Below, in pieces: positions 6,192 to 60,700 of a stretch of DNA of 64,000 nt. Source of the stretch: Setoptus koraiensis (lineage: Eukaryota > Animalia > Arthropoda); contig CM106586.1 of NCBI GenBank assembly GCA_048013815.1, positions 1,922,001-1,986,000 of the forward strand, given 5' to 3'. The position numbers were made by a program, and so were the translations under genes. The notes beneath the pieces were generated by a model, which saw only the letters and a program-made list of their open reading frames with translations, was not told the DNA's origin and did not search any database. The first letter of the stretch is position 1. The number at the start of each line of letters is the position of its first letter.

Positions 6192-6691
6192 NNNNNNNNN
6201 NNNNNNNNNNNNNNNNNNNNNNNNNNNNNNNNNNNNNNNNNNNNNNNNNNNNNNNNNNNNNNNNNNNNNNNNNNNNNNNNNNNNNNNNNNNNNNNNNNNN
6301 NNNNNNNNNNNNNNNNNNNNNNNNNNNNNNNNNNNNNNNNNNNNNNNNNNNNNNNNNNNNNNNNNNNNNNNNNNNNNNNNNNNNNNNNNNNNNNNNNNNN
6401 NNNNNNNNNNNNNNNNNNNNNNNNNNNNNNNNNNNNNNNNNNNNNNNNNNNNNNNNNNNNNNNNNNNNNNNNNNNNNNNNNNNNNNNNNNNNNNNNNNNN
6501 NNNNNNNNNNNNNNNNNNNNNNNNNNNNNNNNNNNNNNNNNNNNNNNNNNNNNNNNNNNNNNNNNNNNNNNNNNNNNNNNNNNNNNNNNNNNNNNNNNNN
6601 NNNNNNNNNNNNNNNNNNNNNNNNNNNNNNNNNNNNNNNNNNNNNNNNNNNNNNNNNNNNNNNNNNNNNNNNNNNNNNNNNNNNNNNNNNN
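6192..6691. other. Assembly gap (500 N)
   Basis: Run of N characters. Confidence 1.
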
Positions 6692-28776: not shown

Positions 28777-29487
28777 TTTGTTGACTGATCGCTGAATTGA
28801 TGGGTTTAGATCAGTAAAAATTCAATATAATTATGATGAGTTTCAATGAATTCATTCCTATCACTCTGGAGAACAGTTGCTCACAAACAGAAAAATCATT
28901 GTTTTTTGTATCATCCAGTGTAACAGTGTCTAGCTACTATAAATAAAGTAAGCCTCGTCTGGATTGTGAGTTGATTGCGGCCCCTGACTAACAGAGCTGC
29001 TAGATTGAGTTTTTGTCGGAATGATCAACTGAGTCGGATATTCGGAAAGTTTCCTCTCTAACTCTATAAAATTAACTCAGATAATGATTAATGTAAATCT
29101 AATATTAGTTGCTGTATAGTGGTAATAATAGATTCTCGATGGTGATAAGATTCTAGCTGTCGTGGTAACGAACTGAAACATCGAATTGAATGGAACACGA
29201 GCTGGACTGAACAACATTAAGTTGCAATTGATTGCCGATGGATAGCTATGTGAAGTAATTGCTGTGGCGTAATCAGCTATTGATCGAATAATAATACTGA
29301 AAATACATATATAATATAAAATCTAATCTCTTTGCTCATTTGATCTAACAATTAAAATACGAGAGGTTGTCTCGACTGCTGACGATGCATTAATAATCGA
29401 TCTGTATTCTGGCTCCTCAAGTATGTATAAGAATTCCCTCTACTCTTTCTTCGTTCCCTTACTTCTATCCCTTTCTTTCTTGTTCAT

Positions 29488-29526
29488 TGTTATTGTTGTT
29501 GTTGTTGCTGTTGTTGCTGTTGCTGT

Positions 29527-29645: not shown

Positions 29646-31044
29646 GTTTCGTTGTTATGGCTGTTGCTTCATACTACCACTGTGCCTCTGCTTTAGCCAA
29701 CAAAATCTACTGAACAGATGTGGTCGAATGCGCACAGTTCGTTCTAAATGCAAAAATTTGTGCTTGTTCGATTAGTAGCAACCCGTTACATGTGAGTGCA
29801 CAATCCGTCCATCGAACACGTTGTGCCATATCTATGCTTTCGTCACAAAGAACCTGTTATTGTGCCATGGCAAGGCGCTAACTTTTCGCCTTCGCTACTT
29901 TAGCTCCATTTGACTAAGCGTTGCGCTGTTTGAATTGTTGACGTCTAGCCAAAATACAGGCTTATTTGCAATAATAATAACTATTTGTCATTAATATCAA
30001 TACGATTTTATCAGCTATAACTAATGTACATAAACTCATCTCATTATATATAAGAATGACTGTGTTTGCCATTTGAACATCGACACCAAACACTACTGCT
30101 GGAATACAGCTAGCTTAGAGTAGGATTTCATTTGTATGGATTCCATGCCATATAACATCTCTCAACCTATTCAACTGATCGTAATAGCAGTTCAATTCTC
30201 TCTCTCTTCCTCTTCTGCAAACCTCTCACTATTTTCCATGATGGAGTCATTTAGCCCACCTAGACTCTCACGAATATAGCTAATGTGCACTTGTTTACTC
30301 TTGGACGATTTATGTCCTCTCTTCGCATAATGATTGGAAATAAGACTAGAGCTTCGGGGATTTTACGACTGACTATACTGTGATATGCTCCGTTTGCTTT
30401 CAAGGATTGTGATGTAACAACTTAAAGTCAATGATGTTTATCAGACATGCCGTGCGATATATAACAATTCGACGACCAAGTAGAAAGATTAATTGAATGA
30501 GATAAATTGCATAACAACCACACCAAATCAATATGTTTCTGCAAAGAGCATTGGTCCCTGTAAAGGATCAGGGAAAAACTTGATTGAGGTGCAAAAAGTT
30601 TGAAAGACATTGATTGGTTAGTTAGTCATATTCTACTTTCAAGGTTCATTCCTGTGTGAGTCGTTGTTAGAGTAGTTTCACTTCATTCATAAACAGTACT
30701 GACAAGAGTAAATGAGCGGGCTTCAACTCGTACGTTTCTTTTCACATAATCATGTCTCTGACCACAATTGTTGGTATGATGGGACAACAGAATTACATAA
30801 CAGATTATTAATAAGAACACTTTTCAATTAAACTTAGTGTTAATGACTAAATTTAAACCACAATAAAATGGTATATGAGAAGCACTCTAGAAATAAGACT
30901 ACAATCCTGCAAATTCATGTACAGTATGTAGTTAAATGGCTTAATTTAGATCATGAATACAAACTAGGTACGTGCTAATGTGCAACTGTTTGACCTCAAA
31001 CTTTCCATCATGCCATCAGTCATTCATTCAGAGAAATCAACAAG

Positions 31045-31168
<124 letters not shown>

Positions 31169-31438
31169 AAAGAAACGGCTTAATATTCCTACCGAATAAT
31201 TTAAGCTATAACGATCGTCTTACTAATGGGTGGTTGGACAGGCCTTTTGGCCAGACGAGATTTATAAGTCGAAAACGATGCTACTGCACAGTACAATAGC
31301 TACATGCGGCATGTACTGGATATCCATGAACTGCAAATGTAACCTTTCGCCTGTCAACATCGAAAGCGCTGCAAGAGACTCTTGATAATTTATTTTTCAA
31401 GTTTGTTTTTATTCGTATTATTCATCATAATTATTTTA

Positions 31439-32073
31439 TCATACTCTAGCGACTCCTCTAAATGGTGTTGCTGTTGTTTGTTGTAGATTTGGTATCTTGT
31501 CAAAACCCATCTCTGCAAGCATATCTTGAGTTTCGGGGTCAACCTCAATAGGATCCACATCAATGGCTGAGACCTGTAAGATTTTTGATGAGAAATAGAG
31601 CGAGATCTCTTATTAGTATAATAATTATTTTGACTAATTGGATAATGCATTGTTTAAAATCGGTAAATGGTTTACCTCTGGCACAAAGTTATCTCGGCGC
31701 TCTCTCTCTTCTTCTTGAAGACGGATGGAGATACCACGAACTGGGCCTTTCGAGATACGCTTCATCAAATGTGTGACGAAACCGGCCACCTTGTTCCTCA
31801 ATTTCTTCGTGGGAATAGTAGCAATTTCATCGCAAATCCTTTTATTTGTGTGGAAGTCAAGTGTGAGCCTAGTGTAGTACTTTTCGATCATGATCTTCGA
31901 GGCCTTCTTTACCGTTTTTGTTCTTACTCTTCCCTGTTAATAGTGGGGCCATAATTATTGGTGAAAGGGAGAAATGTGAATTAGTTATGTTAGTTGCAAG
32001 ATATGATTCAAATAAGCTTTCAGGGGCTGTGCCAATGTGGTCAGAGGGAGCTCGGGCCAGATTCTCTTACCAT
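31439..32073 (-). CDS. RPS17: 40S ribosomal protein S17 (eS17); exons 32073-32071 (ATG only), 31933-31676, 31573-31439
   Basis: M|[86 protein letters not shown]|[19 protein letters not shown]; canonical GT-AG introns. Confidence 0.97.
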
Positions 32074-33165
32074 GATGGTATTTCGCTGGTGTTCCTAATA
32101 TAGATAGTACAAACAGAAATGTCCAACAAGACGCCGATATCTAGAATATTTCTAGGAAGATAGCTGCGGATAATAATAATTGTATACGGTTTTGTATCAA
32201 TAGTTATAATAAGGATGCTTGAGATGGTGATGTGCACGGTGCCTGCAGTGCATTAGGAGAATCAAATTATTAGCTGCCGGTCGAGTATGGAGAGAACGAG
32301 GGACTTTACAGGATGTGTTTGAGGTTGGCGTGGTGTGGGCATCTGCAAAGTATTGTGCACAGAGCGGCTACGTAAATGTTTGTGCTGCCTGTAAAATGCA
32401 TCAAACGAGCGCCATCTGTATTCTACGAAATAAACCTGAAACACATGAAGATTCGTTCTGTCTGCATCTACAACATAGATTGAATCCATCATTTACAATG
32501 AAAACTTATAACGATCCGTTTTCTGTAGAGAGCCTATTCTTCATTCTCGTTTTGCTAACTCCCATCGATCTTTCCCGTGTCTCGCTCTCATGATATTGTA
32601 AAAGGCGCGAATATTCAAACTTGTTTTTTTTTTCTTGAATTATTTGATGCGTATGAATAGTTCATGTCGATATTTAGTTCATTACAAAGATCCAGAGAGA
32701 TTCATTTCGAATGTCTGTTGGCATAGTTTTAGTTGTCTATGGGGACATTCGTAGACATTAAAATTACAATGATAAGCGATATGCAACAAAAATCATGTAA
32801 TAGTAGCAATACAATAACTAACGAGTGTATAAACTTGACCATCCGATATATAGGTTATAGAGTTGTCAATAAGGTGCGCCTTTTCTTATTTTTTCACGTT
32901 AGGTCCGAAAAATCCCGCAAGAGTGAGCCATTACCGCTTTCTTTATACAATCTGTGTTTGTATAGTTGTGTAACAATCTGCATCTTGTTAGTTGGCAACA
33001 GAAGCGCCGACAGCACCTCTAGCGAATATAGTTGAATTGAATGTAGTATTTTTGTAAATTGTTCTATTCTACTGACTGACAAGTGAATAAATGCAAATAG
33101 ATTCACTTTGAGAATGAATGTTCAGGTAACATTCACCATCATCACATTCACTGACAGAGTGTTAT

Positions 33166-33453
33166 TAGTCTATTGCAATATGTGCTCAGCCGCACGATAT
33201 TCGCTTGCGTAGCATCTACAATAGATTGAATCTTACACCACCTATTATTATTATTACTACGAATCCGATTTCATCTAGAATATCTCTTTATTTATTTAAT
33301 AGTTTATTAACCAATAACATGGCCACCAATAATGCAAACAATGTAACATCAGCAACATTCAATGCCCCTAACACACAGCAGCAACATGTAACAACTGGCG
33401 ATAATAACAATCTTTCAGGTGTCCAAAATAGAACAAATCTACCAAATGGTGAA
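33166..33453 (+). repeat. Duplicated 5' module, copy 1 (upstream DNA + codons 1-45 of the BNIP2-like gene); inverted relative to copy 2
   Basis: By-eye alignment to the reverse complement of 38637-38964, including a shared 14-mer CATCTAGAATATCT (33272-33285 vs 38817-38804) and the ATGGCCACCAATAAT start context. Confidence 0.9.
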
Positions 33454-34405
33454 CCACTTTATGAATCATATTTCGAGGATTCATTCGTAAACGAGCTTGA
33501 GGAATGCACCGAAGAAGATGTTGCTGATATCGCACCAGATGAGATTGATGAGGATTGTCAAGATGAGGGGCTCAATCCCTCTACATTGGAATTCGATTTT
33601 GATTCATTTGGTCCAGAATCATTCATATTCACTCCAGGGCCTCGTTATTCCAGCATGAGAAAGAAAGTCTTACCAAATCGTGAGTTACTGTCACAAGAGC
33701 CAGTCACGCCGACCGAAAGTAACGGCCCTGTTAAGCAGATTGACTTAAAAGTTATCGAGCCATATAAAAAGGTTATATCACATGCGGGTTATTGTCATCA
33801 TCACAACAATCCTGCTCTACATAGTTTATCCCCAAGTGAAGGTGGTGAGTTTTCGATTCCAATGATTATTTTCTAGTTACAATATCTTGAACAATTTCAT
33901 CTAACAACATATAATTATTTCTTTTAATTATATTCACTTTTCTATTTTCCATATGATTTTTTATTTCAATCGAATAACAACAGAACCAGCCCCTGCAATA
34001 ATAGTATTCTCGGCGTGCTATCTCCCTGACCGATCTCGAAGGGATTACAGCTATGTGATGGATCATTTGTTTCTTTATGTTTTAACATCACTGCATGAGC
34101 TTGTAGCCGATGATTATATTTTGATATATCTCCATAATTCACGTCCACAGGAAAATAATCTACCAACGTTCAGTTGCTTAAAGAGATGTTATCACATGAT
34201 AGATAGACGTTTGAGGAAGAACCTCAAAGCTCTCTATCTAGTCCAGCCCACTTTTTGGTTGAAAACAATAGTTGTTATGTGCAAACCATTTATTAGTTCC
34301 AAATTCAGTAGGAAGCTGCGCTTTATCGAATCTATTGAGGACCTGAAACAATATTTACCTATCGATCAACTGGTATTTCCACAGAGTACAAGTAGTACGA
34401 CATAG
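33319..34405 (+). CDS. BNIP2/caytaxin/PRUNE2-like BCH (CRAL-TRIO) domain protein; exons 33319-33844 and 33984-34405
   Basis: IDLKVIEPYKKVISHAGY, AIIVFSACYLPD.SR.DY.YVMDHLFLYVLTSL.ELVADDY.LIYLH, LKRCY.MIDRRLRKNLK.LY.V.PTFW, PFISSKFSRKLRFI; acidic N-terminal region; GTGAGT...CAG intron in frame. Confidence 0.92.
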
Positions 34406-36470
34406 TTGGCTGAAAATTCTGCAAATGTGCATTCATAAATAACTCACGATGATATCATTGATAAGATAATAAAATATCATTCAAGGAGAATTTACAAACA
34501 AACAATTTAAATCTCACGTGTTACGCCGAAAATTTCCCTAGAGTGTAATTTGGTTGCTTTAATTGTTGGCCTTACATTTGGCCTTTATGTTTAAACTATG
34601 GCCATTCGGACAGTTTTCGAATACACTACACTACCCTGAAGTATTCAACATTATGATTTTTGTGGCACTGTCTGATTATGGCCAATGCCAATGAAATTTA
34701 AAAGAAGACCAGACCACTTCTGTATCAAAGATGAGAGCCAGACGAACTATCAACATTAAGTGATATAGTAAATATACTGACGGATGGAGTTAGACATGCA
34801 TTGACAGCTCGTTTGCAAATCGAAATTCTCCTAAAAAGGGAGACGTTCAAAGAGAATAAAAGAATAACAATAATAAATCCATATAACTATTCTATATAAA
34901 TACAGCTGCTAACGAATCAACGCGTGCAATTGAGATTGATAAGTTTCAAGTTGAGCTGATTGTAGAAGAGATTGTCGCTTTTTGTTTGCTTATTGTTAAG
35001 TACTTGTGGCAGGTGATACTAGTTAGTTGTTCTAAGCTTGTCACCAAGGCGCAGTAACAATTCTGCAGCAGTGTCTGCCGAGATCGCTATTTCATAATTG
35101 TGAGAAGATCATGTATTGATGATAGCCTGATATTTATTATGAGCAGTATGAAACAGTTCGAAAAAACTGGCAAATCTTTAGATGAAGTAGGCTATTCAAC
35201 TCATGGGTTCAACTCTTTATTTGTATTTCAGTGCTCCGAGCGATAGGTGAATCTTGTAGCTGACCCCAGTCACAATGACCTCTTGTTTGATTGGGGACAT
35301 CTCTTTCTCTCATTTGTTGCAAAGTATTCACTGGTTATTGAACAATCGCGATGCCTTTGATTATACGCGGAATGATGCTTCAAACAATAATCGTCAGAAA
35401 CACCATGATCATCAGGTATGATATAGCATGTCATCAGAGAACAAAAAATAACTCCATCTACAAAGCAAATATTTTCTTAAGCTCCATGGTAGCGCAATCA
35501 ACAAGCAAGGGCCTTCCGCATTTTGGTCTAAATACAAAGAAAATCACTAAACAACCAATTAGTTGCTATTAATTTTATTTTTATCATCCTGATGACCGTA
35601 CATAATTGGTTGTTGCAAAGCTCATCATCACACGCCAAGTCCTCATGTTTATCTCAAACATTTCTGATCGCGATTTAACGTCAATGGTCATTACTTGTTT
35701 TTAGCTTGTCAGTCTAGCTCGTCGGCAGAGTGGCTTATCATCGGCAGAGGATGTGCCATCCTATTCACTCTTACTCTCTTTTTTCTATAATTGCAATAAC
35801 AATACTTGTATACTTGTTTAATCATAATGTTTCTTTGTTATTATTGTTTTTCCCTCCCACTGTCTACAACTCTCAAGATATCACGACACTACTATGTGAC
35901 AGTATACATGTAGTGGCTAGATAGAGGAAGCGGGCCACAACAACAACGACGACGATTAACAACAACTGTGATTAACAGGATTGATTGACTGAGTACTGAA
36001 CACTAAAGTCAATCAAAACATGGAGATATTTATTGCAGTTGTGTATAGTCAAATGTAATCAAAACTAACTATTGGATGAGAAAATGGATGTAGACAATGG
36101 ATTCTTGCAAGTAGACGCCAATTGTTATGCAACAGACCCTACATAATCTTGTTGTCATTGCCATTGGATTGACTATAGTGATCGGTCTCTCCACATTTTG
36201 GCACATATATATAAATACTTGTGACAAACATGAACACAATCTTTTTTTGATGCTTCGCATATCATCATCCTACACACACATACAAATACATAAATGATTG
36301 AGGAAAGATCTATCGAGGGAAGTAGTATCTTCACACTTCCTCAGAATCAACATCAAATTTGCTATTGTGAAGTAGTTGGAAGCAATATGAAAAAAACTAG
36401 TTAACAACAGTTAATTAATAATATGAAACAACAATTCTACAGCATCTCAAGTCATCGGTATATGAGATAC

Positions 36471-36478
36471 TATATAAA
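36471..36478 (+). promoter_or_regulatory. Candidate TATA box for the SIFamide gene
   Basis: TATATAAA about 100 nt upstream of the ATG; the AT-rich background makes this weak. Confidence 0.3.
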
Positions 36479-36575
36479 CATCTATAGAAGAGATAAAGCA
36501 GCACTTGATACTAGCAACATCAACCCAATTAAGGGAAAATCCAAACCCGAAGAGACCTATTACAAAGCTCATTAA

Positions 36576-36827
36576 ATGGCTTTTGTAAGGAGCGGCTTCA
36601 GAAACCACCTACTTATAATCTCATCATTAATTATCATAACTAACTTATTTATGTCAACCTCGCAAGAGAATGCAATGCATACTATCGTATCACCAATCAT
36701 GTTTGCCCACGCAAATCCACTTCCGGAGCCTCGCCCTGCGCCTGCTAGCTCTTCACACAGGAAACCACCATTCAATGGTAGCATATTTGGAAAAAGATCC
36801 GTCGATACTAAAGATTATTATGCCTAG
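36576..36827 (+). CDS. SIFa: SIFamide neuropeptide precursor, 83 aa
   Basis: Hydrophobic signal segment followed by the invariant RKPPFNGSIF, then G (amide donor) and the KR cleavage site. Confidence 0.95.
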   Translation: MAFVRSGFRNHLLIISSLIIITNLFMSTSQENAMHTIVSPIMFAHANPLPEPRPAPASSSHRKPPFNGSIFGKRSVDTKDYYA

Positions 36828-36983
36828 AACTTTGTTTTTATCAGATTGTATTAAATTAATATTTAAACAGTTGCAAACAGTTCAAAATAGCGTCTTTATC
36901 TGAGATGTTATCTTGTTACGATTAGAATCATCTTTGACTACAGTTTAAATTTATTCTTTCTGATTTGAAACGAAGCAACGCTA

Positions 36984-38771
36984 TCACCAACACTTACAAT
37001 CCAAATGAGTCGAAGCAACTCCATCTTTACGCGATCCAATGCAGCTATCATTATTGCGGACATTGTTATTGTTACTGATTACATAATTCACGTCTATATC
37101 AACAGGATCTTCTTTTGAAACGGATATCTTACAAACTATATCATTTAATATAGCCTCGATTGCTCCCTGTTCACACCTATAACATACAAATCCTATAAGT
37201 AGTATGAGCGAGAAGATAAATGACGATCCGAGCCACATGACTACTAATGTTGTAAGGGATAAGATCTCACCCGATAACGCGTAGTAACTAGATGCTGGCA
37301 ACGTGATGATAAACATTACCAACGCTAAAATAAATAATCTTGTCTTAGACGCTTTGTTGAATTGATGATAATGGATAAGTATTTTTTGTGTTTGTTCCAT
37401 AACATGTATATTGCAAAGATGATCTTTCGAGGGTGATATGTCTTTTTCCGGCAACCACTGATTGATTGTTTCACGAAGATCACCATTTGGACCTAGAGAT
37501 TCCAGCGTCGATAAATCTCGATGTCTTCGAAGTGTTGGATGCTGATGTAACATATCATGACTAACATCGATGATTTTTAATTCAACTGCTACTGGCTCGT
37601 GATCACTCAAGGAGCATTCAGAATCTACGTCCTTACTTTTGCTTGATATTCGGTCAACAAGACAATGTCCATGAGTTAATAATCTACATAAAATAAAATC
37701 TATCCGTTTTTTCGGTGTATCATGTGCATTCTTCGAGTATAACTTTTTACTTTTATTACTAACGACAGTGTTGCTATTTTGATCTAAGCTTGCTATGTCT
37801 TTGCCAGCCTTTTTTGAGTAGGAATTTTGCATTGGTGTGAATGAGTTTCTAGGGTGACAAAATGTTATGTCTTCTTCCTCGGTATCACTTGAAGCTGAAT
37901 AATAGCTAGTGCTTGACAATGCTGAAGCCCTAGTGTCTCCCCTCTGATCTATTATAGATGTTAATTTGTGTCCATGGACAACATTTGCATGAAAATTTCT
38001 AGTGCGCGTCTTGTAACAATCGGCCAATCCAGCCATAGAGGTTAGAATTTTGTATGGTAGACCGGAAGAGGTAGAGTTCATGTCACCTGCAACTATTATC
38101 AAATCTTTTCCATGTATTTTCCTATTGCTGGCTGTATCGGTTATGAAATTTATGAACCTAGCTAATTGATATGACTGACACATTCTGTGCACTGAATATT
38201 GATCGTATATGCTCTCATTTTCACTGTAGTAGGCATGCATATGTGTGGAGAATAGATGCAGCGACAAGCCATCGAAATCGACCCGCGAATAAGCAATTCC
38301 TTTGCCAGCAAACCAGTCTCCATGCCATGGATAGAAAGGCGAACCATTCAGTGAGAACGGTTCAAAGTGTACAACCTTTGGTACCCATCGGCACAATATC
38401 ACTATACCACTGGAGCCTAAGACTGAGCCCGAGCGGTACAAATGGGCAAATTTGTATTTCTTCCTAGTTCCTTCTTTAATGCTTTCAAAATCTGAGCCGA
38501 CCCAAACCTCCTGCAAGAAAACAATATCGTAATTGTTTTCATTTAGATGACGAACAATTGCCGGCATACGCTCCTTCCTCTTCTCTGAGCCAAACCACAG
38601 ACCCCAGCAGTTGAGAGTTAGTATTTTCAATGTGAATTCTCCATCGGGCGTTGAAAGATTTGTATCATTTTGGACTCCTGAAAGATTGTTATTATCGCCA
38701 GTAGGTACATGTTGCTGTTGTATGTTGAGGGTATTAAATGTTGCTGATGTTGTATTATTATTGGTGGCCAT
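36984..38771 (-). CDS. SMPD2: Neutral sphingomyelinase (SMPD2/nSMase1-like, EEP fold), 595 aa, intronless, with a 45-aa N-terminal extension
   Basis: LKILTLNCWG, DIVFLQEVW, GSSG, GDWFAGKG, THMHA, AGDMN, KRIDFI, SDHEPV, and two C-terminal TM helices. Confidence 0.9.
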   Translation of the reverse strand: MATNNNTTSATFNTLNIQQQHVPTGDNNNLSGVQNDTNLSTPDGEFTLKILTLNCWGLWFGSEKRKERMPAIVRHLNENNYDIVFLQEVWVGSDFESIKEGTRKKYKFAHLYRSGSVLGSSGIVILCRWVPKVVHFEPFSLNGSPFYPWHGDWFAGKGIAYSRVDFDGLSLHLFSTHMHAYYSENESIYDQYSVHRMCQSYQLARFINFITDTASNRKIHGKDLIIVAGDMNSTSSGLPYKILTSMAGLADCYKTRTRNFHANVVHGHKLTSIIDQRGDTRASALSSTSYYSASSDTEEEDITFCHPRNSFTPMQNSYSKKAGKDIASLDQNSNTVVSNKSKKLYSKNAHDTPKKRIDFILCRLLTHGHCLVDRISSKSKDVDSECSLSDHEPVAVELKIIDVSHDMLHQHPTLRRHRDLSTLESLGPNGDLRETINQWLPEKDISPSKDHLCNIHVMEQTQKILIHYHQFNKASKTRLFILALVMFIITLPASSYYALSGEILSLTTLVVMWLGSSFIFSLILLIGFVCYRCEQGAIEAILNDIVCKISVSKEDPVDIDVNYVISNNNNVRNNDSCIGSRKDGVASTHLDCKCW

Positions 38772-38964
38772 ATTAGTGACTGATAAACTGTTTAATATGT
38801 AATAGATATTCTAGATGTAACCAGATTTGTAATAGTAATATATTGATAACAATATTAAAAATAATAATTGTGATTAACTAGAAAAATGTGTATCGTTTAT
38901 TTAATACATTTTGGATGCTACGCTATCTAATGTCGTGCGGTTGAGCACTTATTGCAACAGATTA
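38637..38964 (-). repeat. Duplicated 5' module, copy 2 (upstream DNA + codons 1-45 of the sphingomyelinase gene)
   Basis: Reverse complement aligns with 33166-33453; contains extra AT-rich sequence in the non-coding part. Confidence 0.9.
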
Positions 38965-41096
38965 TGGTATAATAAGTTTAATTAATGTATATATTCATCC
39001 TAGAGTGAATCCATTAGACTTTATACATTTGTCGGTGGAATAAAACAATTCGCAGAGATCCTACATTCAATTCGGAAATATTCGCTAGGGGTGCTGTTGG
39101 CGCTTTTGTTACAGATTGTTACACAACAAAACAATCAGCAATAGTATGAGAAAGGCAGTATTAGCTCACTCTTGCGGAATATCCTGGACCTAATGTGAAA
39201 AATAAGAAAAGACGCACGTTATCGACATTTTTATATAACCTATATATCAGATGGACAGGTTGATACCATCTTCAGTTACTACCCAGAGCGTCACTTTCTG
39301 TGCTTTGTGCAGCGCAGAATTCCATGTCGCTGTTCAAAAGTGAAGTAGAATCTGCGCGCTAATTCCTCAGACGCACAGACTCATTGTGCCTTTTTCGCAA
39401 AATATCCATCTCTCGCTAGCCGAGCCCTCTACCCAACCGGGTATCTCGCCTTGAAGCAACAACAAATGACCAAGGTTCCATACAAAGATAATTTTAGGAC
39501 ATTTCACAACTTTCCTGTCGTATGAAATTATTTTTCGTTGTTCGCACACTGAAAATATGCCCCCAATCAATCCTGGTCTACGGACGCTGGATAGCATGAA
39601 GCCATTACTGTGTGCCATCTCTGCGAGCTTATCGAAAGTAAGATTAATTAAGTTCAGAAGTACCCAAATAAATATTTTGTCGAATGAGAATGCCGGGAAA
39701 CAATTTCCATTGGCCAGCGGACTACTCCACCGCCGCACAGTTCACGCCACAGAATTCGGGCGATTTGATGCCGTGGGCGTTCTCAAAGACCGCTAATACC
39801 CGTTACACTATGCCGCTCGACTTGACGCATGTAAATATATACCGTATGCGCTTTTCCCGATGGCTCCCGCGTAGTTTTTTTTTATACCACCAGGAGCGCG
39901 CAGAGCGTGTCTGGATGCACACACAAGCACAAGGTGCTGCGTTAAATATTTATTTATTTTGATTCAATTCAGAATGCATTCATGACGATGAGCGTACATG
40001 TTTTTGACGCGAGGTGGCGAATCGGCTGTTCATATCGTTACGCTAACATTACCTCTTATAAGTTCACATGTTCATATTCACTGATGAACATATTCACATA
40101 TATTCATTATATGTTGACAGTGGTGTTCTCGTTGGAACACTTCGCCTATGCTCTTGATCTCATACAATTCTGTACAATAAACCATAAATCTACATGTATT
40201 TAAATCAATAGGAAATATCTTACCCAGCGTCTAGTCTATCATCTGTTTGTATGGATCAACTGTTCACACTGGATATGAAAATGCAAGTGCGCCGTCCTGG
40301 CGGATCAAGATAAAACCATGCGAGTGCTACTAGGAAAAGCACACACAGCACACATGCAGTCGTAGTTACATAATCAGGCCACGCAACAATTGAGGTGGCA
40401 CCATTAGGCAGTATCCACTACAGGTTGCGTACACACTTGAAATTCAAAGTCTGCATACTTTAGTTGAGTCGCTCTCCACGAGGTGGTTTCAGTTGATAGT
40501 GTGCTAGGCATGCCATATGCTTTTTTATTTGTTTTGATCTATCATCAACAGGCAACCATTATACAGTTCGAATCTGCAATTAATTTTTGTTTTGTATATA
40601 TAATTTTAATATATTTTTTTTATTTAATCATGCGCTTTATCGTCGATCAACATGAAACTCATATGATTTTGGGAAGGTATTGTTCTCTTCTTTTTGTCAA
40701 AGAAACAATTGCTGCGAGTAAACAATGACCACGATCATGATCAGGGGATAATTGGAAGCGCGAGCAGACGAGCGGTGTAGATATAATTGATTAAATATAG
40801 AGTAAACAAACAACAATCATAGATACAATTATAATTGGCATACATACACGATAGATGCTGATATTTGTTTGACTAAAAGCACTGTAGATCCAAGTAATCA
40901 AGTTGTAAGTGACATCTGTTGTTATATAAATATCTGTTTCGATAGATATAGACTATGAAGGTATAAGTAAGATTTCAATTGGTCTCCTTATTACAAAAAT
41001 TTAATAGATGATGTTGAGCCTTAATTGAGCATAGATAAAATAATAATACTAAGTGTCGGCGACGACAATGACAACCATATGCATCGTACGACGAGA

Positions 41097-44078
41097 CTAA
41101 GAGGAAAGACTATCGCCTTGAGACTGCGAAGTTGTCATCTCATCGGCTATAGCGGCGGCCAGCGCTCCCCCTCTACCACTGCCGTCATCGACGCCAATAA
41201 TTTTAAATGTGTGATTCGGGGCAAGTTGTTTGGTGAAGTCAGTTAACAGCTTGTGAAATTTGGGATGTTTCTTATAAACCGAACCATCAACAGCAATCAC
41301 CGTGTAGCTTCTGTTCATCCGTTTCAATAGGGCAGATAAACCTAGAGGCGCATTTAAATCAAACATAAGAAAAGCATTAATATCACCATGACTGGGCCTG
41401 GTAGCAACAAGAATGGCGACAAATGAAACATATAATTGCCAGCGCCTGTCTCTATGTGTAAGCTCACATCGATATGAGCCATATTGACATTAAACAGGTG
41501 TTTATACTTACAAGCAGCCAAGATAAGTGCGTTTCGCACAAATAAGCTAGCAACAATGAACTTGACAATCTTGACATCTTGGTTGTTGACGTCGCTATCT
41601 TCCAATTCGAAAGCAGTGCGCAAAATAAGTGACACTTGTGCCATTGAACATGATGGACTATGCATGCATATATGTATGCATGTGTATGTATGTATATATG
41701 AATGCATGTATAGAATGTTGTAGTTTTTATAAAGAGCAATAATAGAATGATGATAATAGACCGATTATAATTTCCATATAATTTCTAGAAGATGATCATT
41801 TCTATAGCTAATCTAACTAACTACAAGAGTGGGTCGTTGTCGTGTCATTCCTATGAGGACCAAACAGATCAACGTAAAGAGAGGAGAACAACAACATGTA
41901 TATCAGAAAGGTCAATTATGTTGTGACATCAACTGTCACAATGTCATTTCTATCTATCTATTTAGAGAGGCTGATAAGCATTCTTATATATGAATGACTT
42001 TTGATGTATGCGTACCTCTCTATAGCGGACGTCACGGGAGATAATAGCGAATGTTTCGTGGACATCTTTGAGGTGACTTTACCATTAAACAATATAGACT
42101 GTTGGGCAAAGTCTAGGATAACGTAACGACATATTTCCCCTAAGAAGTTTCCACCATAAAGCTTCTCGAAGCTGGCATATGACGAATGATTTAGTGGTTG
42201 TCACACATTATTATCATACGATGAGAGATTGTGAAGATAAAATAGATTAGTAAGATTAGTCAGATTAGTTACAATGGTCGTAGATAGATGTAGCAGGCGG
42301 GCCGACAACACGCTACTCATTGTGACTGTAAGTCATGTAGACAAGTGGATTTAAAATTTCATCCTTGAGATTTGAGCAGCTAAATCTATAAAGTCACAAC
42401 CTATTAGTCATGTGACAGCCAGAAGGAGCCAATAGAATGAACTCTTGTGCACGATGGAAGCTACGATAAGGTTATCGTGACTAATCACCAGCACTCGTCC
42501 AAGTTGGCGCCGTTTACTAATGACTATCGCCGCTGCCTGTTGAGTTTCAACAACGCTTGTGCAGAGATACATGGGAGTATCGTTGCAGTGAGGGTAGTAT
42601 TCCTATAATCAAGGGCCATACTAAAGGCGGTTTAACGAAAGTTAAAAAACGCCTGCGACAGGAAAACCTGTTGATATGAAACCTGTTGTTGCCGCTACCT
42701 GCAGTATAGGTGAGAAAGAGCTACGATTGATTGGTTGTTGGCCTATAGCATACTAACGTAAATGAATTAGTAAAAAGTGAATTCTTATCAACGGTCTCAT
42801 CGTATTTCGTGTGGATAAAATTGATTTTCCCATCATCGCCAAACGCTCCACATTCAATGTCAATAGCGACTTCTGGTTCGGCGACAGTATTTGCTCCCGC
42901 AGCTAAACAGCTTCCAGCTCCGCCGTTGCAATTGGGCGGCATAGTTTGTGTTTTATCACTATTATCGCCATTTCTACCACCGAATGGTTCCAAATGTGTT
43001 TGATCTGCTAGCCTAGACACCGTGGAAACTTTTTCTAGATAGCATATATTTCCACCGCTGCCAACAATCATTCCAATTGCACAATCCCTGTCGACAAATC
43101 TACCTTGCAACAATGTTCCTGTTGTATCATTCAGTATGGCTATCACTTTGATCCTCAGATGCTGTTGTACAGTAGTGTAGTCGGGGATGATGCAGTTTGT
43201 CGGTCGATGAGTATAGATTTGGAAGAAATACGCAAACAATATAGGTATGATGAGTGGATAAGTAATTTGTGTATACGGTAGATTAGTTGTGAGTTCAATA
43301 TTTGTTTGTCGAACTTGAACACTCACAAAAACAAACAGATCATTGTTACCTAGACTAACAGGTAGTTGTGTGTGTTTGTGTGCGAGTGTGTTGCATAACA
43401 ATATTAAATAATAATAAACGATTTACACACCTGAAGCCTATCAATGGCATCCTGGAGCAATTTCACCACATCCTGGCCTATAGCGTCGGGACAATCGAAA
43501 CTTTTTGTCCAGGTCAATAATATTGCCTTATCTATTGCTGTTTGATCAGTTGGAAAGGAGAAGGTAAATCCCAGCTTCAGTGGTTCGCCCGCAGAATTGA
43601 CAACAGCCAAATGGCGATCCTTTAACTTGTCGAATGATTGCACAAAATCGGATATGCATGAGGCTATAAAATCAAATAATTTTTTACATTCGCCACATCT
43701 CAATTGTTGCGGAACATCATAGAATCTGACATGGGTCTCACAATTGTCTGAATCACCATTAAATGTTGACCATAGGACACGAAAGTTGGTACTGCCTAAA
43801 TCCAATGATAGATAATCGCCGCGTTCCAATCCGTTCGGATATTGGCCAGGTATGTAGGTGTTTGCCATTAAAAATGTCGATTTGCTTGGGATGTTCTTGT
43901 TTTTGCCTAATAAACCTAGATCACATTCACGATCGAAAATTCTCTCTAGACATTCTAATTTCTCTTGATTGACCATGAATCCTTGTAGTTCGGCCTCAAC
44001 TCTTGTTTTGAGTTCCTCATCGTCGATTTTTAATTGTGGATAATGAAATTCAGAATCGGCAAGTAAATGATGTTCCAT
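41097..44078 (-). CDS. Hexokinase (single ~50 kDa domain); exons 44078-43431, 43161-42758, 42171-42016, 41657-41512, 41341-41097
   Basis: LSLDLGSTNFRV, LGFTFSFP, WTKSF, AILNDTTGTL, GMIVGSG.N.CYLE, E.GAFGD, FEKLYGG..LGE, AVDGSVYKKHP, DDGSGRGGAL. Four GT-AG introns, all phase-consistent. A further upstream exon is possible. Confidence 0.94.
41777..41980 (+). ncRNA. Weak candidate U3-like snoRNA, antisense within hexokinase intron 4 (the 42015-41658 intron, third in transcript order)
   Basis: GATCATTTCTATAG (41794-41807) equals U3 box A as recalled; ATGAGGA (41853-41859) sits at box C' spacing; GGCTGA ends at 41974. There is no clean box C, the box B match is poor, and the terminal stem is weak. 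Confidence 0.2.
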
Positions 44079-44892
44079 GATGTTGTTACTTCTGATGGTA
44101 GTTGTGGTGGTTGAAGTTTTAAAAGGTTCAAGCGGGAGCGGGTAAAAAGTAGTGAGGTAAGATAGTTGTTGTTGCTGACTGTGATATAATTATGATAATA
44201 TAGAGAGGATGTATCTAAAATAATTGTCAATATATGGTTGTTGTTGTCTATAAAGGCAAGTAAATGTGTGTGCGTGTGTGGCTTAACTAGTGATTGAGAT
44301 ATAGAGAGTGAGTGTGTGTTCAAGTGTAGCGATAATTTGTGATACACAAATGCTTGAATTAAACAGAACTGATCTAGATTACGGTTGATCGTCTTGTATA
44401 TGTTATATATATATATACGAATACACAAACATATTCATTCTACATAGATATTGGATATATATATATATGTATATAATGAGTATGAGATCCAAATAAAAAT
44501 TTATCACCGATGGTTGTTATTGTCTCACAACTCATTTGTTGAGCGGCAGCAGCAACAACAACAACAACAACAACAATGGCAGGGTGTTTTATTTTTGATG
44601 AACTAGAGTATAGCGATACCCTGGGTAAGACGATAAGAAAGGCTCATTTTTCGTATATAAAAGAAGTGTCAGAAATTTTTGCTCTTTTTTGTTATTGTTG
44701 TTCTGTGCAATTGCACAAACATCTCCAATAAATTTATTGATAATTATAACAAAATATACTTGGTATATTAATGGCAATAATAATAATAATAATAGTAGTA
44801 CTAATAGATTAGTAGTAATAATTGTTATCAATAATAATAATAAAGGTGTGTTACTAATATTTGTGTGTATATGTGTGTGTGTGAGTGTGTGG

Positions 44893-57797: not shown

Positions 57798-60700
57798 ATG
57801 GTTAAAATATTGCCAAGCAAATATTTGTTCACATTGATCGCATCGAGCCTATTGATTCAATTGAGCTTTACTGATGCCCATCTCGGTTTAGCTTTAGGAG
57901 CCTTAGGAGGAGGAGTATATGGTAGGCGAACATAAACTAAATTTACTTGATGAAATTTTTAATTTTGTCCTTCCTCTGTGACGTTTCAATCGGTTTTAAT
58001 CGATTGAGCTCACAGAATCGAAATGATATTGGAATTCTACTACTTAGAGAAATAATTTGCATAGAACCCGAATGGGTTCCACCATTCATTTGGGTTACTG
58101 TATATATATGAACATATATATATATATTCATATAGGAATGCAAATTATCACGATGATGGTTGTTAATACAAACAGACAAATAACTACACACACTACATAC
58201 ACACACACACATATACGCACGCACACCTCATCAAACTATCACTATTACTACTCTCCACTAAATTTCTACTTCCTGTTGCTAACTTAATTCAAACCAAAAA
58301 CCTGATACTGTAACAACGACCTAGGCCAAGCAGCCCATACAGAGAATGTACCAGATATAGTACCTCTATCACCCTATAACAATTTATTATACTACAAGTA
58401 TTACATGCTAGATGATAGGACAATGCAGATGAATTATAATAATGAAGATAATAGTCGAAATAGTCAAAAATATAATAGTTATAATGATGATGATAATAGG
58501 GCGAAAATCAATAATAATCATCGTCCAGCTAGTCAGCAGCATAATGATAGCGGCAAAAGTAGTAGTGGTAATAGTGTGTCTATCAGACAAGATCAACCAC
58601 CATCACCATTATTTGATCGACAACAAGTTAATGGGGCCAATTCTAGTGGTGCTAATATCTCTGAAACCTTAAACGGCCCAAGTGATAGACGAAGTTATTT
58701 GGTCGATCATGGTAGTCAAATGGACAATAATGACACTACCATTCATGATAAGTCAGTGTCGTTGTTCAACGACAACAAGAGTGATATAAAATTGAAAGAA
58801 AAATTGTATCTATCATCATCTGTCACTACCATCATTGGAGGTGCCGCTGCTGCCGCCACGCCCCCGCTATCACCGACTACCATTGCGCAACCAAATAAAT
58901 TATCAATTAGTTCAATTGACAATCATGAAACTGATGACGGCAACAATGCTCAACATCAACAACAACAGCAACTACAACAACAACAACAGAATAGGAATTT
59001 GTATTATACTGTTAACGACGACAACAAACAATTGGAACAAACAGCGAAGAATGCTGCACGATCCTCTTCCTATAGAAGAGGCAAAAGATCAATCAGTAGT
59101 AGTACCAGTAGTAGTAGTAGTAGTAGTAGTAGCACCAGTAGTAGCAATAGCAACAACGACAACAATCAACAACCGACAAGGCGAAACAACAGATTGTTGC
59201 GCAATAATAAATCACCGTTGTCACCAATTAACCTATTGAATGATCAACAACAATCGTCAATCTATCAACGGATGGGCATAATCAATAGTAATCCGTATAG
59301 TGATTTTGTGGCCGATTTAACAGCAGCATCACCAATGGCGGCTACACAGGCAACTATAAGGGCAGCGGTATTAGCATCTAGAAAGGCACCTAAAACTGTC
59401 GATATCAAAATTAGGCCTGGTCATATGATTAACAATCATCAACCATTTATAACTGCCAGCCATTCTTCCGGTAGCAGCAATAGTAATAATGGTGGTGATA
59501 ACGGTGATAACAACAACAATCCCGTTTCCGGTCACTACTACTTAAATAAGCCAAAAAACAATAATAACAGATTTAGTAGATTAGATACACCACAACAAGC
59601 CTTAATTAATCGTCGTTATAAACATAATCGTCAACAGTATTCATTACCGATCTTGAATCGGTTTTGGCCATTCAAAAACTACGATCATATTAGCAGATAC
59701 TTATTGCCAGCAAAATTTATTAATCAACAACAGCAACAGCAACAACCAACAAACAACAACAACAACAATATTATGATGATGGCGGGTAGTCGGGGGGTAC
59801 CTACAAGGTTGGGAGGCGTGGTAAGCGGCGGCGGCAGTCATAAGCTACCTCCGTCAATAATGCGGGTTGCAGCGACGCCGTTGCCATTGCCGTTGCACGT
59901 ACCCTTACCACAGCAGCAAATACCCACCAACACCCTTGACAATAGTGGACCATCTAATAATGTTGTTGTTGTTGAGTCACTCTCACGCCCACCACTTTCA
60001 CAAATACCACAATATACACCAATACCTCTATCACCCGCCTATCGATTTTTCACTTCCGTTCCACCTGCTACTAACAATGCGATCAAACCGCAACCTTTAC
60101 CACTAACAAATACGGGCCCCGTGAGGCCAAGCTATCTATCTACAAATGACAACCCATTGCAAGACACAATTTTAGCTAATCAGTTACCAGTTTATCAACC
60201 TTTAAATTATTATCCTAGCAGTGAAACAATCAATATTAACAATGTTAATAGTATAGATTTAGAAGGCTTGCCGCAAGCTAAACAAAAGCAATATACTTCA
60301 CCGGAGCGCACTCTGACATCGAATGCTCCATCCGGAGTTAATGTGCTGCCACTAGAGCAGAATAGTCCTATAATTAGCTTCGAAACTAATGATTTAGCCC
60401 CAGATTTATCGAGTTTGCCGATTGAGACACCTGCGTCACAGCCACTGATTGGTCCACTGCCGCCACAATATTGGCGATGGTGGGCACCGGAAACAGCTCC
60501 TTTAATGCCATCAGTGACACCATTGTTGGCCGCATCAAGGATGCTTGATGAGCTTCCGGAAGTACCCCATCTTGCAGCGACAAACGTGGAGCCCAGTGGG
60601 TCACTTAGTGGGCAGGCCAATTCAGCCATTAAGCCATTGACTGTGGCTAGTGATCTGAATATGGCCAAGTCGAACGTGATTGAGCCTGTGGCCCGACCAT

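What the first reader, a model, noticed from the sequence alone, without database searches (positions are those of the whole stretch)
33166..38964. Two unrelated genes share a duplicated, in-frame 5' module (upstream DNA + first 45 codons)
Seen: the BNIP2-like BCH gene (+, ATG 33319) starts MATNNANNVTSATFNAPNTQQQHVTTGDNNNLSGVQNRTNLPNGE and the neutral sphingomyelinase (-, ATG 38771) starts MATNNNTTSATFNTLNIQQQHVPTGDNNNLSGVQNDTNLSTPDGE. By hand, 35 of 43 aligned residues are identical. Both indels in the coding part are 6 nt, several differences are synonymous (TTC/TTT, CAG/CAA, GGT/GGA, CTA/CTT), and similarity continues about 150-190 nt upstream of both ATGs. Established: SMPD2-type enzymes normally begin right at the (F.L)LRIFNLNCWG strand, which here starts immediately after the shared segment. 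Inference: the enzyme acquired a copy of its neighbour's promoter/5'UTR and N-terminal peptide, making a chimeric gene that may be co-regulated or co-targeted with the BCH scaffold, and the peptide may be under selection in both.
Basis: partly seen in the sequence, partly recalled or inferred. Interest (0 to 1): 0.82.

Follow-up and report, generated by a model that had tools for sequence, protein, structure and literature searches.

The report
Sphingomyelinase gene with neighbour's borrowed front
In a tiny plant-feeding (eriophyoid) mite, a conserved neutral sphingomyelinase gene lost its own front end and now starts with a mirror-image copy of the upstream DNA, start codon and first 40 codons of its neighbour, a BNIP2/BCH-domain gene. 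This is a real, transcribed example of a known kind of gene fusion, and earlier unchecked scan notes describe similar cases elsewhere in this genome.

Summary
A ~630-nt inverted repeat, A 32815-33445 (+) and B 39278-38651 (-), is the only long repeat in the window. Each copy holds ~504 nt of upstream DNA, the ATG and 42 or 40 codons.

- **Direction of transfer.** In the closest sequenced relative (Logan SRR33593474) the BCH gene has the module. Its sphingomyelinase (92% identical) has an unrelated 26-codon start. Homology to our gene begins exactly at the junction (38651). So BCH is the donor and the enzyme is the recipient, whose native 5' end was replaced.
- **Not an artefact.** Independent assemblies span both junctions.
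- **Expression.** A cDNA-like run has a contig running from the enzyme body through the borrowed codons, the ATG and 113 nt of leader.
- **Start codon.** The borrowed ATG is the first start codon after the upstream in-frame stop. The next Met lies beyond the conserved LNCWG strand.
- **Age.** The event is about as old as the split from the relative.
- **Constraint.** Copy B evolves ~3x faster than A, and its peptide is weakly constrained (ratio ~0.56). The peptide is polar, without a hydrophobic stretch or Lys/Arg. I read it as a passenger and the promoter, leader and ATG as the useful part. Co-targeting is unsupported.
- **Mechanism.** An inversion with staggered breaks is rejected here.

The scan has noted at least 9 similar "re-headed" genes elsewhere in this genome. 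I did not test those.

The parts
32815..33318 (+). Copy A, non-coding part: upstream region and 5'UTR of the BCH/BNIP2-like gene (the donor).
   Evidence: Aligns with B and with the relative's L002:487-978 at 86%. L002 stays collinear beyond the module on both sides.
33319..33444 (+). Copy A, coding part: ATG and the first 42 codons of the BCH gene.
   Evidence: The relative's P0121 has the same N-terminus (93% identity).
33319..34405 (+). BCH/BNIP2-like gene. Exon 1 is 33319-33844, the intron is 33845-33983, and exon 2 is 33984-34405 including the stop. The product is 315 aa.
   Evidence: Pfam CRAL_TRIO_2 E=4.5e-27. P0121 carries the BNIP2 family. A contig of run X7 skips 139 nt with GT..AG ends. 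The exon joint matches P0122.
36984..38771 (-). Chimeric neutral sphingomyelinase (SMPD2 type), a single 595-codon ORF.
   Evidence: Pfam Exo_endo_phos. Orthologues are named sphingomyelin phosphodiesterase 2. Human SMPD2 8J2F matches at E=8e-34. Omega is 0.066 against the relative.
38652..38771 (-). Copy B, coding part: the borrowed ATG and 40 codons. The junction with the enzyme's own sequence lies at 38652|38651.
   Evidence: This ATG is the first start codon after the upstream in-frame stop. The next Met is residue 69, beyond the LNCWG strand.
38772..38884 (-). Transcribed leader of the chimeric gene (at least 113 nt), within copy B and partly B-specific insertion.
   Evidence: X7 record 22 covers 38304-38884 with 0 differences.
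38885..39278 (-). Copy B, distal part: a copy of the BCH upstream region and the presumed promoter of the chimeric gene.
   Evidence: Aligned to A at about 75-80% throughout, with a decayed patch at 39019-38962. X7 gave no RNA contigs from 39028 to the end of the stretch laid, 39400. The promoter role is inferred.
39279..40353 (.). 1,075 nt of unexplained lineage-specific DNA between copy B and the conserved far-upstream region.
   Evidence: No counterpart in the relative's L001, no repeat in the window, and no Pfam hit in its ORFs.
40353..40855 (-). Far-upstream region shared with the relative's sphingomyelinase locus.
   Evidence: L001:567-1053 aligns at 69.5%. This shows the enzyme's outer flank did not move.

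Best explanation
A ~630-nt piece of the BCH/BNIP2-like gene was copied in inverted orientation. It held about 390 nt of promoter, about 110 nt of leader, the ATG and the first 40-42 codons. The copy was joined in frame to codon 'T-P' of the convergent neighbour 5.2 kb away, an SMPD2-type neutral sphingomyelinase. It replaced that gene's own upstream DNA, start codon and roughly 26-residue N-terminal extension.

Shown: the repeat, its borders, the donor/recipient polarity, the intact and strongly constrained enzyme body, transcription across the junction, and the borrowed ATG being the first start codon after the upstream in-frame stop.

Inferred: the copy now supplies the promoter, transcription start and initiation codon of the enzyme. 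The 40-residue polar peptide is mostly a tolerated passenger on a region that is variable in this clade anyway.

The event dates to about the split from the closest sequenced relative. How it arose is not resolved. A local templated insertion seems most plausible, for example a replication template switch or ectopic repair of a break with 0-1 nt of microhomology.
For: - **Repeat.**. It is the only repeat in the window.
- **Polarity.** The relative's BCH has the module and L002 is collinear over 32394-35965. The relative's enzyme has an unrelated start, and L001 homology begins at 38651.
- **Assembly.** A 13.4-kb contig of X2 covers 33420-39400 with 0 differences. Independent X3 contigs cross 38651 and 39278.
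- **Transcription.** X7 has the BCH intron spliced out and a contig over 38304-38884.
- **Function retained.** Enzyme body dN/dS is 0.066 over 552 codons. It aligns to human SMPD2 from residue 3, right at the junction.
- **Age.** Branch lengths are B=89, A=29 and A'=35 changes over 577 sites. dS between A and B is 0.33, against a species dS of 0.25-0.52.
- **No further copies.** No other contig of X2 or X3 lay on B at 85% or more. Only P0121 carries the peptide.
Against: - Only one outgroup species is available, and it is known from two short contigs.
- Copy B is as far from A as from the relative's A'. The copy could therefore predate the split.
- The transcription start is not mapped. The X7 contigs are low depth and have no direction.
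- B's upstream part has diverged at about the neutral rate, so its promoter function is not shown by conservation.
- The extra 1,075 nt at 39279-40353 is unexplained.
Confidence: 0.85

Rival explanations
1. The same chimeric gene, but older. The copy arose before the split from the relative, which kept or re-fixed the unfused allele by lineage sorting of a polymorphism.
For: The A and A' branches are equal (29 vs 35, p=0.53). B's branch (0.15-0.17 per site) equals or exceeds half the neutral species divergence.
Against: A replaced 5' end cannot be regained, so this rival works only if both alleles were still segregating at the split. One event soon after the split, with relaxed constraint on B, fits equally well.
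Confidence: 0.2
2. The borrowed peptide is the selected part. It gives the enzyme the same localisation or partner binding as the BCH scaffold.
For: The reading frame and 35 of 42 alignment columns are kept. A-B omega is 0.35.
Against: Omega is not significantly below 1 (p=0.06). The B-branch ratio is 0.56 with 7.8 non-synonymous changes. The peptide is N/T/Q-rich, with no hydrophobic stretch and no Lys or Arg. It is not conserved in a more distant eriophyoid BCH orthologue (P0122). Frame maintenance is forced by the enzyme downstream.
Confidence: 0.1
3. The inverted duplication is a by-product of an inversion with staggered breaks, as at Drosophila breakpoints.
For: The two copies are inverted and flank a 5.2-kb segment. 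Their size is in the range reported by Ranz et al. 2007 (PMC1885836).
Against: The segment is not inverted relative to the outgroup. L002 runs collinearly from the left flank through A into the BCH body. L001 runs from the enzyme's far-upstream region into its body.
Confidence: 0.03
4. Misassembly, or a dispersed repeat or transposon remnant.
For: None found.
Against: Independent assemblies span both junctions. There are two copies only, with no transposase ORF, no Rfam family and no tRNA. No further look-alikes appeared in whole-run contigs or in 1.84 billion proteins.
Confidence: 0.02

Closest known systems
Chimeric genes formed by partial DNA duplication (Drosophila Sdic, jingwei and Hun; C. 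elegans chimeric and partial duplicates; review PMC3449122; Hun in PMC1463047)
   Same: A partial copy of one gene's 5' end (regulatory DNA plus first codons) is joined in frame to another gene. Polarity is established with a single-copy orthologue in a related species.
   Different: In the classical cases an extra, new gene appears and both parents stay intact. Here the recipient is a conserved enzyme whose own 5' end was replaced, so the fusion is the copy in use at this locus. The copy is short, inverted, local (5.2 kb away) and not tandem.
Inverted duplications at inversion breakpoints (staggered-break model, Ranz et al. 2007, PMC1885836)
   Same: Short inverted duplicates of unique genic sequence, a few hundred nt long, lying at the two ends of a segment.
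   Different: No inversion of the enclosed segment relative to the outgroup.
SMPD2 (neutral sphingomyelinase 1; human structure 8J2F)
   Same: An Exo_endo_phos catalytic core aligning from human residue 3, followed by a hydrophobic C-terminal region.
   Different: A long insertion-rich middle part typical of the eriophyoid orthologues, and an N-terminal 40 residues derived from an unrelated gene.

Membership tests
Chimeric gene by partial duplication of a neighbour's 5' end | Two paralogous segments with similarity far above chance, ending inside both ORFs. | tested here: met
   About 630 nt, E=7e-82. The borders are 33445 and 38651 inside the ORFs.
Chimeric gene by partial duplication of a neighbour's 5' end | Donor and recipient identified with an orthologue in another species. 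| tested here: met
   The relative's BCH has the module and its sphingomyelinase lacks it.
Chimeric gene by partial duplication of a neighbour's 5' end | In-frame junction, intact ORF, and transcript across the junction. | tested here: met
   595-codon ORF. X7 contig 38304-38884. Body omega 0.066.
Chimeric gene by partial duplication of a neighbour's 5' end | Both parental genes persist intact beside the new gene (classical 'chimeric duplicate'). | tested here: not met
   The donor is intact. The recipient's native 5' end, as seen in the relative, has no trace in the window. Whether another sphingomyelinase copy exists elsewhere in the genome was not testable.
SMPD2-type neutral sphingomyelinase | Endonuclease/exonuclease/phosphatase fold with SMPD2 as closest solved relative. 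| tested here: met
   PF03372 E=3.7e-12. 8J2F E=8e-34, covering residues 3-209 of the chain. Named orthologues.
SMPD2-type neutral sphingomyelinase | Catalytic and metal-binding residues and enzyme activity. | not tested
   Residues were not checked one by one. Strong purifying selection is only indirect support.
BNIP-2 / BCH (CRAL_TRIO_2) domain proteins | C-terminal BCH domain and a BNIP2 motif region. | tested here: met
   PF13716 E=4.5e-27 on exon 2. PF12496 on P0121-P0126.
Inversion-coupled inverted duplication (staggered breaks) | The segment between the duplicates is inverted relative to the outgroup. | tested here: not met
   L001 and L002 are each collinear with the window across the inner borders.
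Transposable element or dispersed repeat | Many copies, or element-encoded features. | tested here: not met
   Two copies in the window. No further contigs of X2 or X3 lay on B. No Pfam or Rfam hits. A whole-genome search was not possible.

The most novel reading that the evidence does not exclude
This locus is one instance of a genome-wide, recurrent process in eriophyoid mites. Conserved, often essential genes have their promoter, leader and start codon replaced by short, mostly inverted copies of a neighbour's 5' end.

Earlier notes of this scan describe at least 9 further cases in the same genome: URM1, AsnRS, DAD1, SAP130, PPCS, TAF6, NOP2 with SLC30A9, mitochondrial IleRS, and clathrin. 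I tested none of them.

If the rate is truly elevated, it would point to one of two causes. One is a lineage-specific repair or replication habit. The other is rescue of genes whose promoters were eroded during extreme genome streamlining. The eriophyoid genome papers I checked by term search show no mention of such an event.
Probability: 0.45. Interest if true: 0.75.

Novelty: new member of a known kind. Interest (0 to 1): 0.45.

Why it matters
- **As a case study.** It is a clean, polarised and transcribed example of a conserved lipid-signalling enzyme continuing to work after its whole front end was swapped for a neighbour's. The swap covered the promoter, leader, start codon and N-terminal extension. 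It shows how tolerant such regions are, and how regulatory DNA can be transplanted together with a coding stub.
- **For annotation.** The two genes share 40 codons without being related, so automated tools could mis-cluster them or mis-call the start.
- **The larger point, if the other scan notes hold.** Such "re-heading" may be unusually common in ultra-compact mite genomes. That would be a new aspect of genome streamlining.

Tried and rejected
- **Structured RNA or tRNA in the shared DNA.** Rfam (E up to 1) and tRNA scans of 30-42 kb found nothing.
- **Inversion with staggered breaks.** Rejected by collinearity with L001 and L002.
- **Microhomology at the inner junction.** Only 1 nt (A) is shared. 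A nearby 10-of-12 match (CCAAATGGTGAA against CCCAATAGTGAA) lies 6 nt off the junction and cannot be the joint, because B keeps the enzyme's ACGCCC.
- **Remnant of the native enzyme start in the window.** BLASTN and TBLASTN with the relative's 364 nt and 26 codons gave only chance hits.
- **Origin of 39279-40353.** No repeat, no Pfam ORF, no counterpart in the relative.
- **Extra species from JGI metagenomes.** The coding pattern found nothing. The promoter pattern gave 11 loci that BLAST showed to be chance matches.
- **Other carriers of the peptide.** A profile search of 1.84 billion representatives found only the relative's BCH. Chimeras hidden inside 50% clusters would be missed.
- **Findings search by sequence.** Blank, which means nothing here.
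- **Co-regulation.** Only one reads call was allowed and contig depths are not expression measures, so it was not tested.
- **Third protein-database search.** Not used, because the length window would have excluded the relevant hits.
Full report
**1. Observation**

The sequence at the given coordinates is as described. MAFFT and seed-extension searches show the similarity is an inverted repeat. Copy A is 32815-33445 on the + strand and copy B is 39278-38651 on the - strand.

BLASTN gives one alignment of 669 columns, with E about 7e-82. Identity over ungapped columns is 78%: 76% upstream and 87% in the coding part. A self-comparison of the whole 64-kb window finds no other repeat of 100 nt or more.

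It holds about 504 nt upstream of each ATG, plus 42 codons in A and 40 in B. The peptides match in 35 of 42 alignment columns.

**2. The two genes**

*Copy A heads a BNIP2/BCH-domain gene.*
- Exon 1 is 33319-33844, followed by a 139-nt GT..AG intron. Exon 2 is 33984-34405, giving 315 residues.
- Exon 2 carries CRAL_TRIO_2 (E=4.5e-27).
- Relatives carry the BNIP2 family.
- The intron is removed in a contig of run X7.

*Copy B heads an intronless 595-codon ORF (36984-38771, - strand).*
- It has the Exo_endo_phos domain.
- Its orthologues are named sphingomyelin phosphodiesterase 2 or neutral sphingomyelinase in other mites. The best named hit is from the eriophyoid Aceria tosichella.
- Human SMPD2 (PDB 8J2F) aligns from its residue 3 to residue 42 of the mite protein, immediately after the borrowed part.

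The genes are convergent, so the two copies lie on the outer sides of a 5.2-kb segment.

**3. Polarity**

The closest relative in public data is one Logan assembly, SRR33593474.

- Its sphingomyelinase P0001 is 92% identical, but begins with an unrelated 26 residues (MADTQVNG...), then TPNSEFTLKIL.
- At the DNA level its contig L001 is 87% identical to the window from L001:1417 onward. That point corresponds exactly to 38651, the inner border of copy B.
- Further upstream, L001:567-1053 matches 40855-40353.
- Between these points the relative has 364 nt and our genome has 1,702 nt. The 1,702 nt are copy B plus 1,075 nt of unexplained DNA. The relative's 364 nt have no counterpart in the window.

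The relative's BCH orthologue P0121 starts with the module (93% identity to A). Its contig L002 is collinear with 32394-35965, straight through both borders of copy A.

BCH is therefore the donor, and the enzyme is the recipient whose own 5' end was replaced. The junction is S40|T41.

**4. Not an artefact, not a dispersed repeat**

- In run X2, one 13.4-kb contig covers 33420-39400 without a difference and also contains copy A.
- In run X3, from a different sample and study, contigs with no differences cross 38651 (38104-38996) and 39278 (39153-39379).
- No other contig of these whole-run assemblies lay on copy B at 85% likeness or more.
- A profile of the three peptides found only P0121 among 1.84 billion representative proteins.
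- Rfam, tRNA and Pfam searches of the region gave nothing.

**5. Expression and start codon**

Run X7 behaves like cDNA. Its contigs cover the exons, and one lacks the BCH intron. Another X7 contig covers 38304-38884 without a difference. That span is enzyme body, junction, borrowed codons, ATG and 113 nt of leader. Nothing was laid from 39028 to 39400.

The ORF table shows ATG 38771 is the first possible start after the upstream in-frame stop. The next Met is residue 69, beyond the conserved LNCWG strand. Translation of the borrowed 40 codons is therefore very likely, though not shown by protein data.

**6. Age and constraint**

*Branch lengths.* In the three-way alignment (A, the relative's A', B) the branches are 29, 35 and 89 changes over 577 sites. 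A and A' are equal (p=0.53), and B is about 3 times longer.

*Synonymous divergence.* dS between A and B is 0.33. Between species it is 0.25-0.36 for BCH and 0.52 for the enzyme.

*Timing.* The copy is about as old as the species split. It arose either just after the split or just before, with sorting of a polymorphism.

*Constraint.*
- The enzyme body is strongly constrained (omega 0.066 over 552 codons).
- The module peptide is only weakly constrained. A-B omega is 0.35 (p=0.06 against neutrality). The B-branch ratio is 0.56, from 4.2 synonymous and 7.8 non-synonymous changes.
- B's upstream part has changed at roughly the neutral rate, and similarity is spread evenly at about 80%, with one decayed patch.

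**7. Interpretation**

The N-terminal extension of this enzyme is hypervariable among eriophyoids, ranging from none to about 75 residues. The borrowed peptide is polar and N/T/Q-rich, has no hydrophobic stretch and no Lys or Arg, and is absent from a more distant BCH orthologue (P0122).

I therefore read the peptide as a tolerated passenger. The promoter, leader and ATG are what the enzyme now depends on. Preservation of the frame is explained by selection on the enzyme itself. Co-targeting is unsupported, and co-regulation is untested.

**8. Mechanism of origin**

Inverted duplicates flanking a segment are the signature of inversions with staggered breaks (Ranz et al. 2007, PMC1885836). The enclosed segment is not inverted relative to the relative, and both outer flanks are where they were. 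That model fails at this locus.

The inner junction shares only 1 nt. A local templated insertion fits best, for example a replication template switch or ectopic repair of a break in the enzyme's 5' end. This remains inference.

**9. Comparison with known cases**

This belongs to the known class of chimeric genes made by partial DNA duplication (review PMC3449122; Hun, PMC1463047, listed). It differs in that no extra gene was made. A conserved enzyme had its front replaced, and the copy is short, inverted and local.

Of the eriophyoid genome papers found, I searched two by term.
- The 2020 Aculops paper uses "chimeric" only for merged transcript contigs.
- The 2026 Floracarus preprint holds none of the terms I searched.

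Neither describes such an event.

**10. Context from the scan**

Earlier notes on this same genome describe at least 9 further genes "re-headed" by copies of a neighbour's 5' end, most of them inverted. I could not test them. If they hold, the phenomenon is recurrent, and that is the most interesting reading.

Noticed in passing
window 39279-40353: 1,075 nt between copy B and the conserved far-upstream region. It has no counterpart in the relative's contig, no repeat in the window and no recognisable ORF. It is slightly GC-richer (up to 48%). It may have been co-inserted with the module, or deleted in the relative.
   Followed up: partly
window 34558-34808 and 35194-35411: cDNA-like contigs of run X7 lie in the space between the two convergent genes, where no ORF exceeds 75 codons. 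They may be a long BCH 3'UTR or an unannotated small or non-coding transcript.
   Followed up: no
window 31634-31891 (-): An exon encoding the conserved core of ribosomal protein S17e (identified by eye). It is divergent from the BCH gene, so BCH may share a two-way upstream region, of which only the proximal ~500 nt were copied.
   Followed up: no
window 42721-44078 (-): Two adjacent ORFs that look like halves of a hexokinase-like gene, upstream of the sphingomyelinase locus.
   Followed up: no
window 30972-31199 and 35937-35965: Long (GA)n / Arg-Glu-coding simple repeat at the first place. At the second, a short low-complexity stretch where both contigs of the relative end. Similar stretches recur at 29486-29523, 44550-44577 and 58951-58987.
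   Followed up: no
window 6192-6691: A 500-N assembly gap.
   Followed up: no
same genome, other windows (scan notes): At least 9 other notes describe genes whose 5' end is a copy of a neighbour's upstream DNA plus first codons. This suggests a recurrent process in this genome.
   Followed up: no
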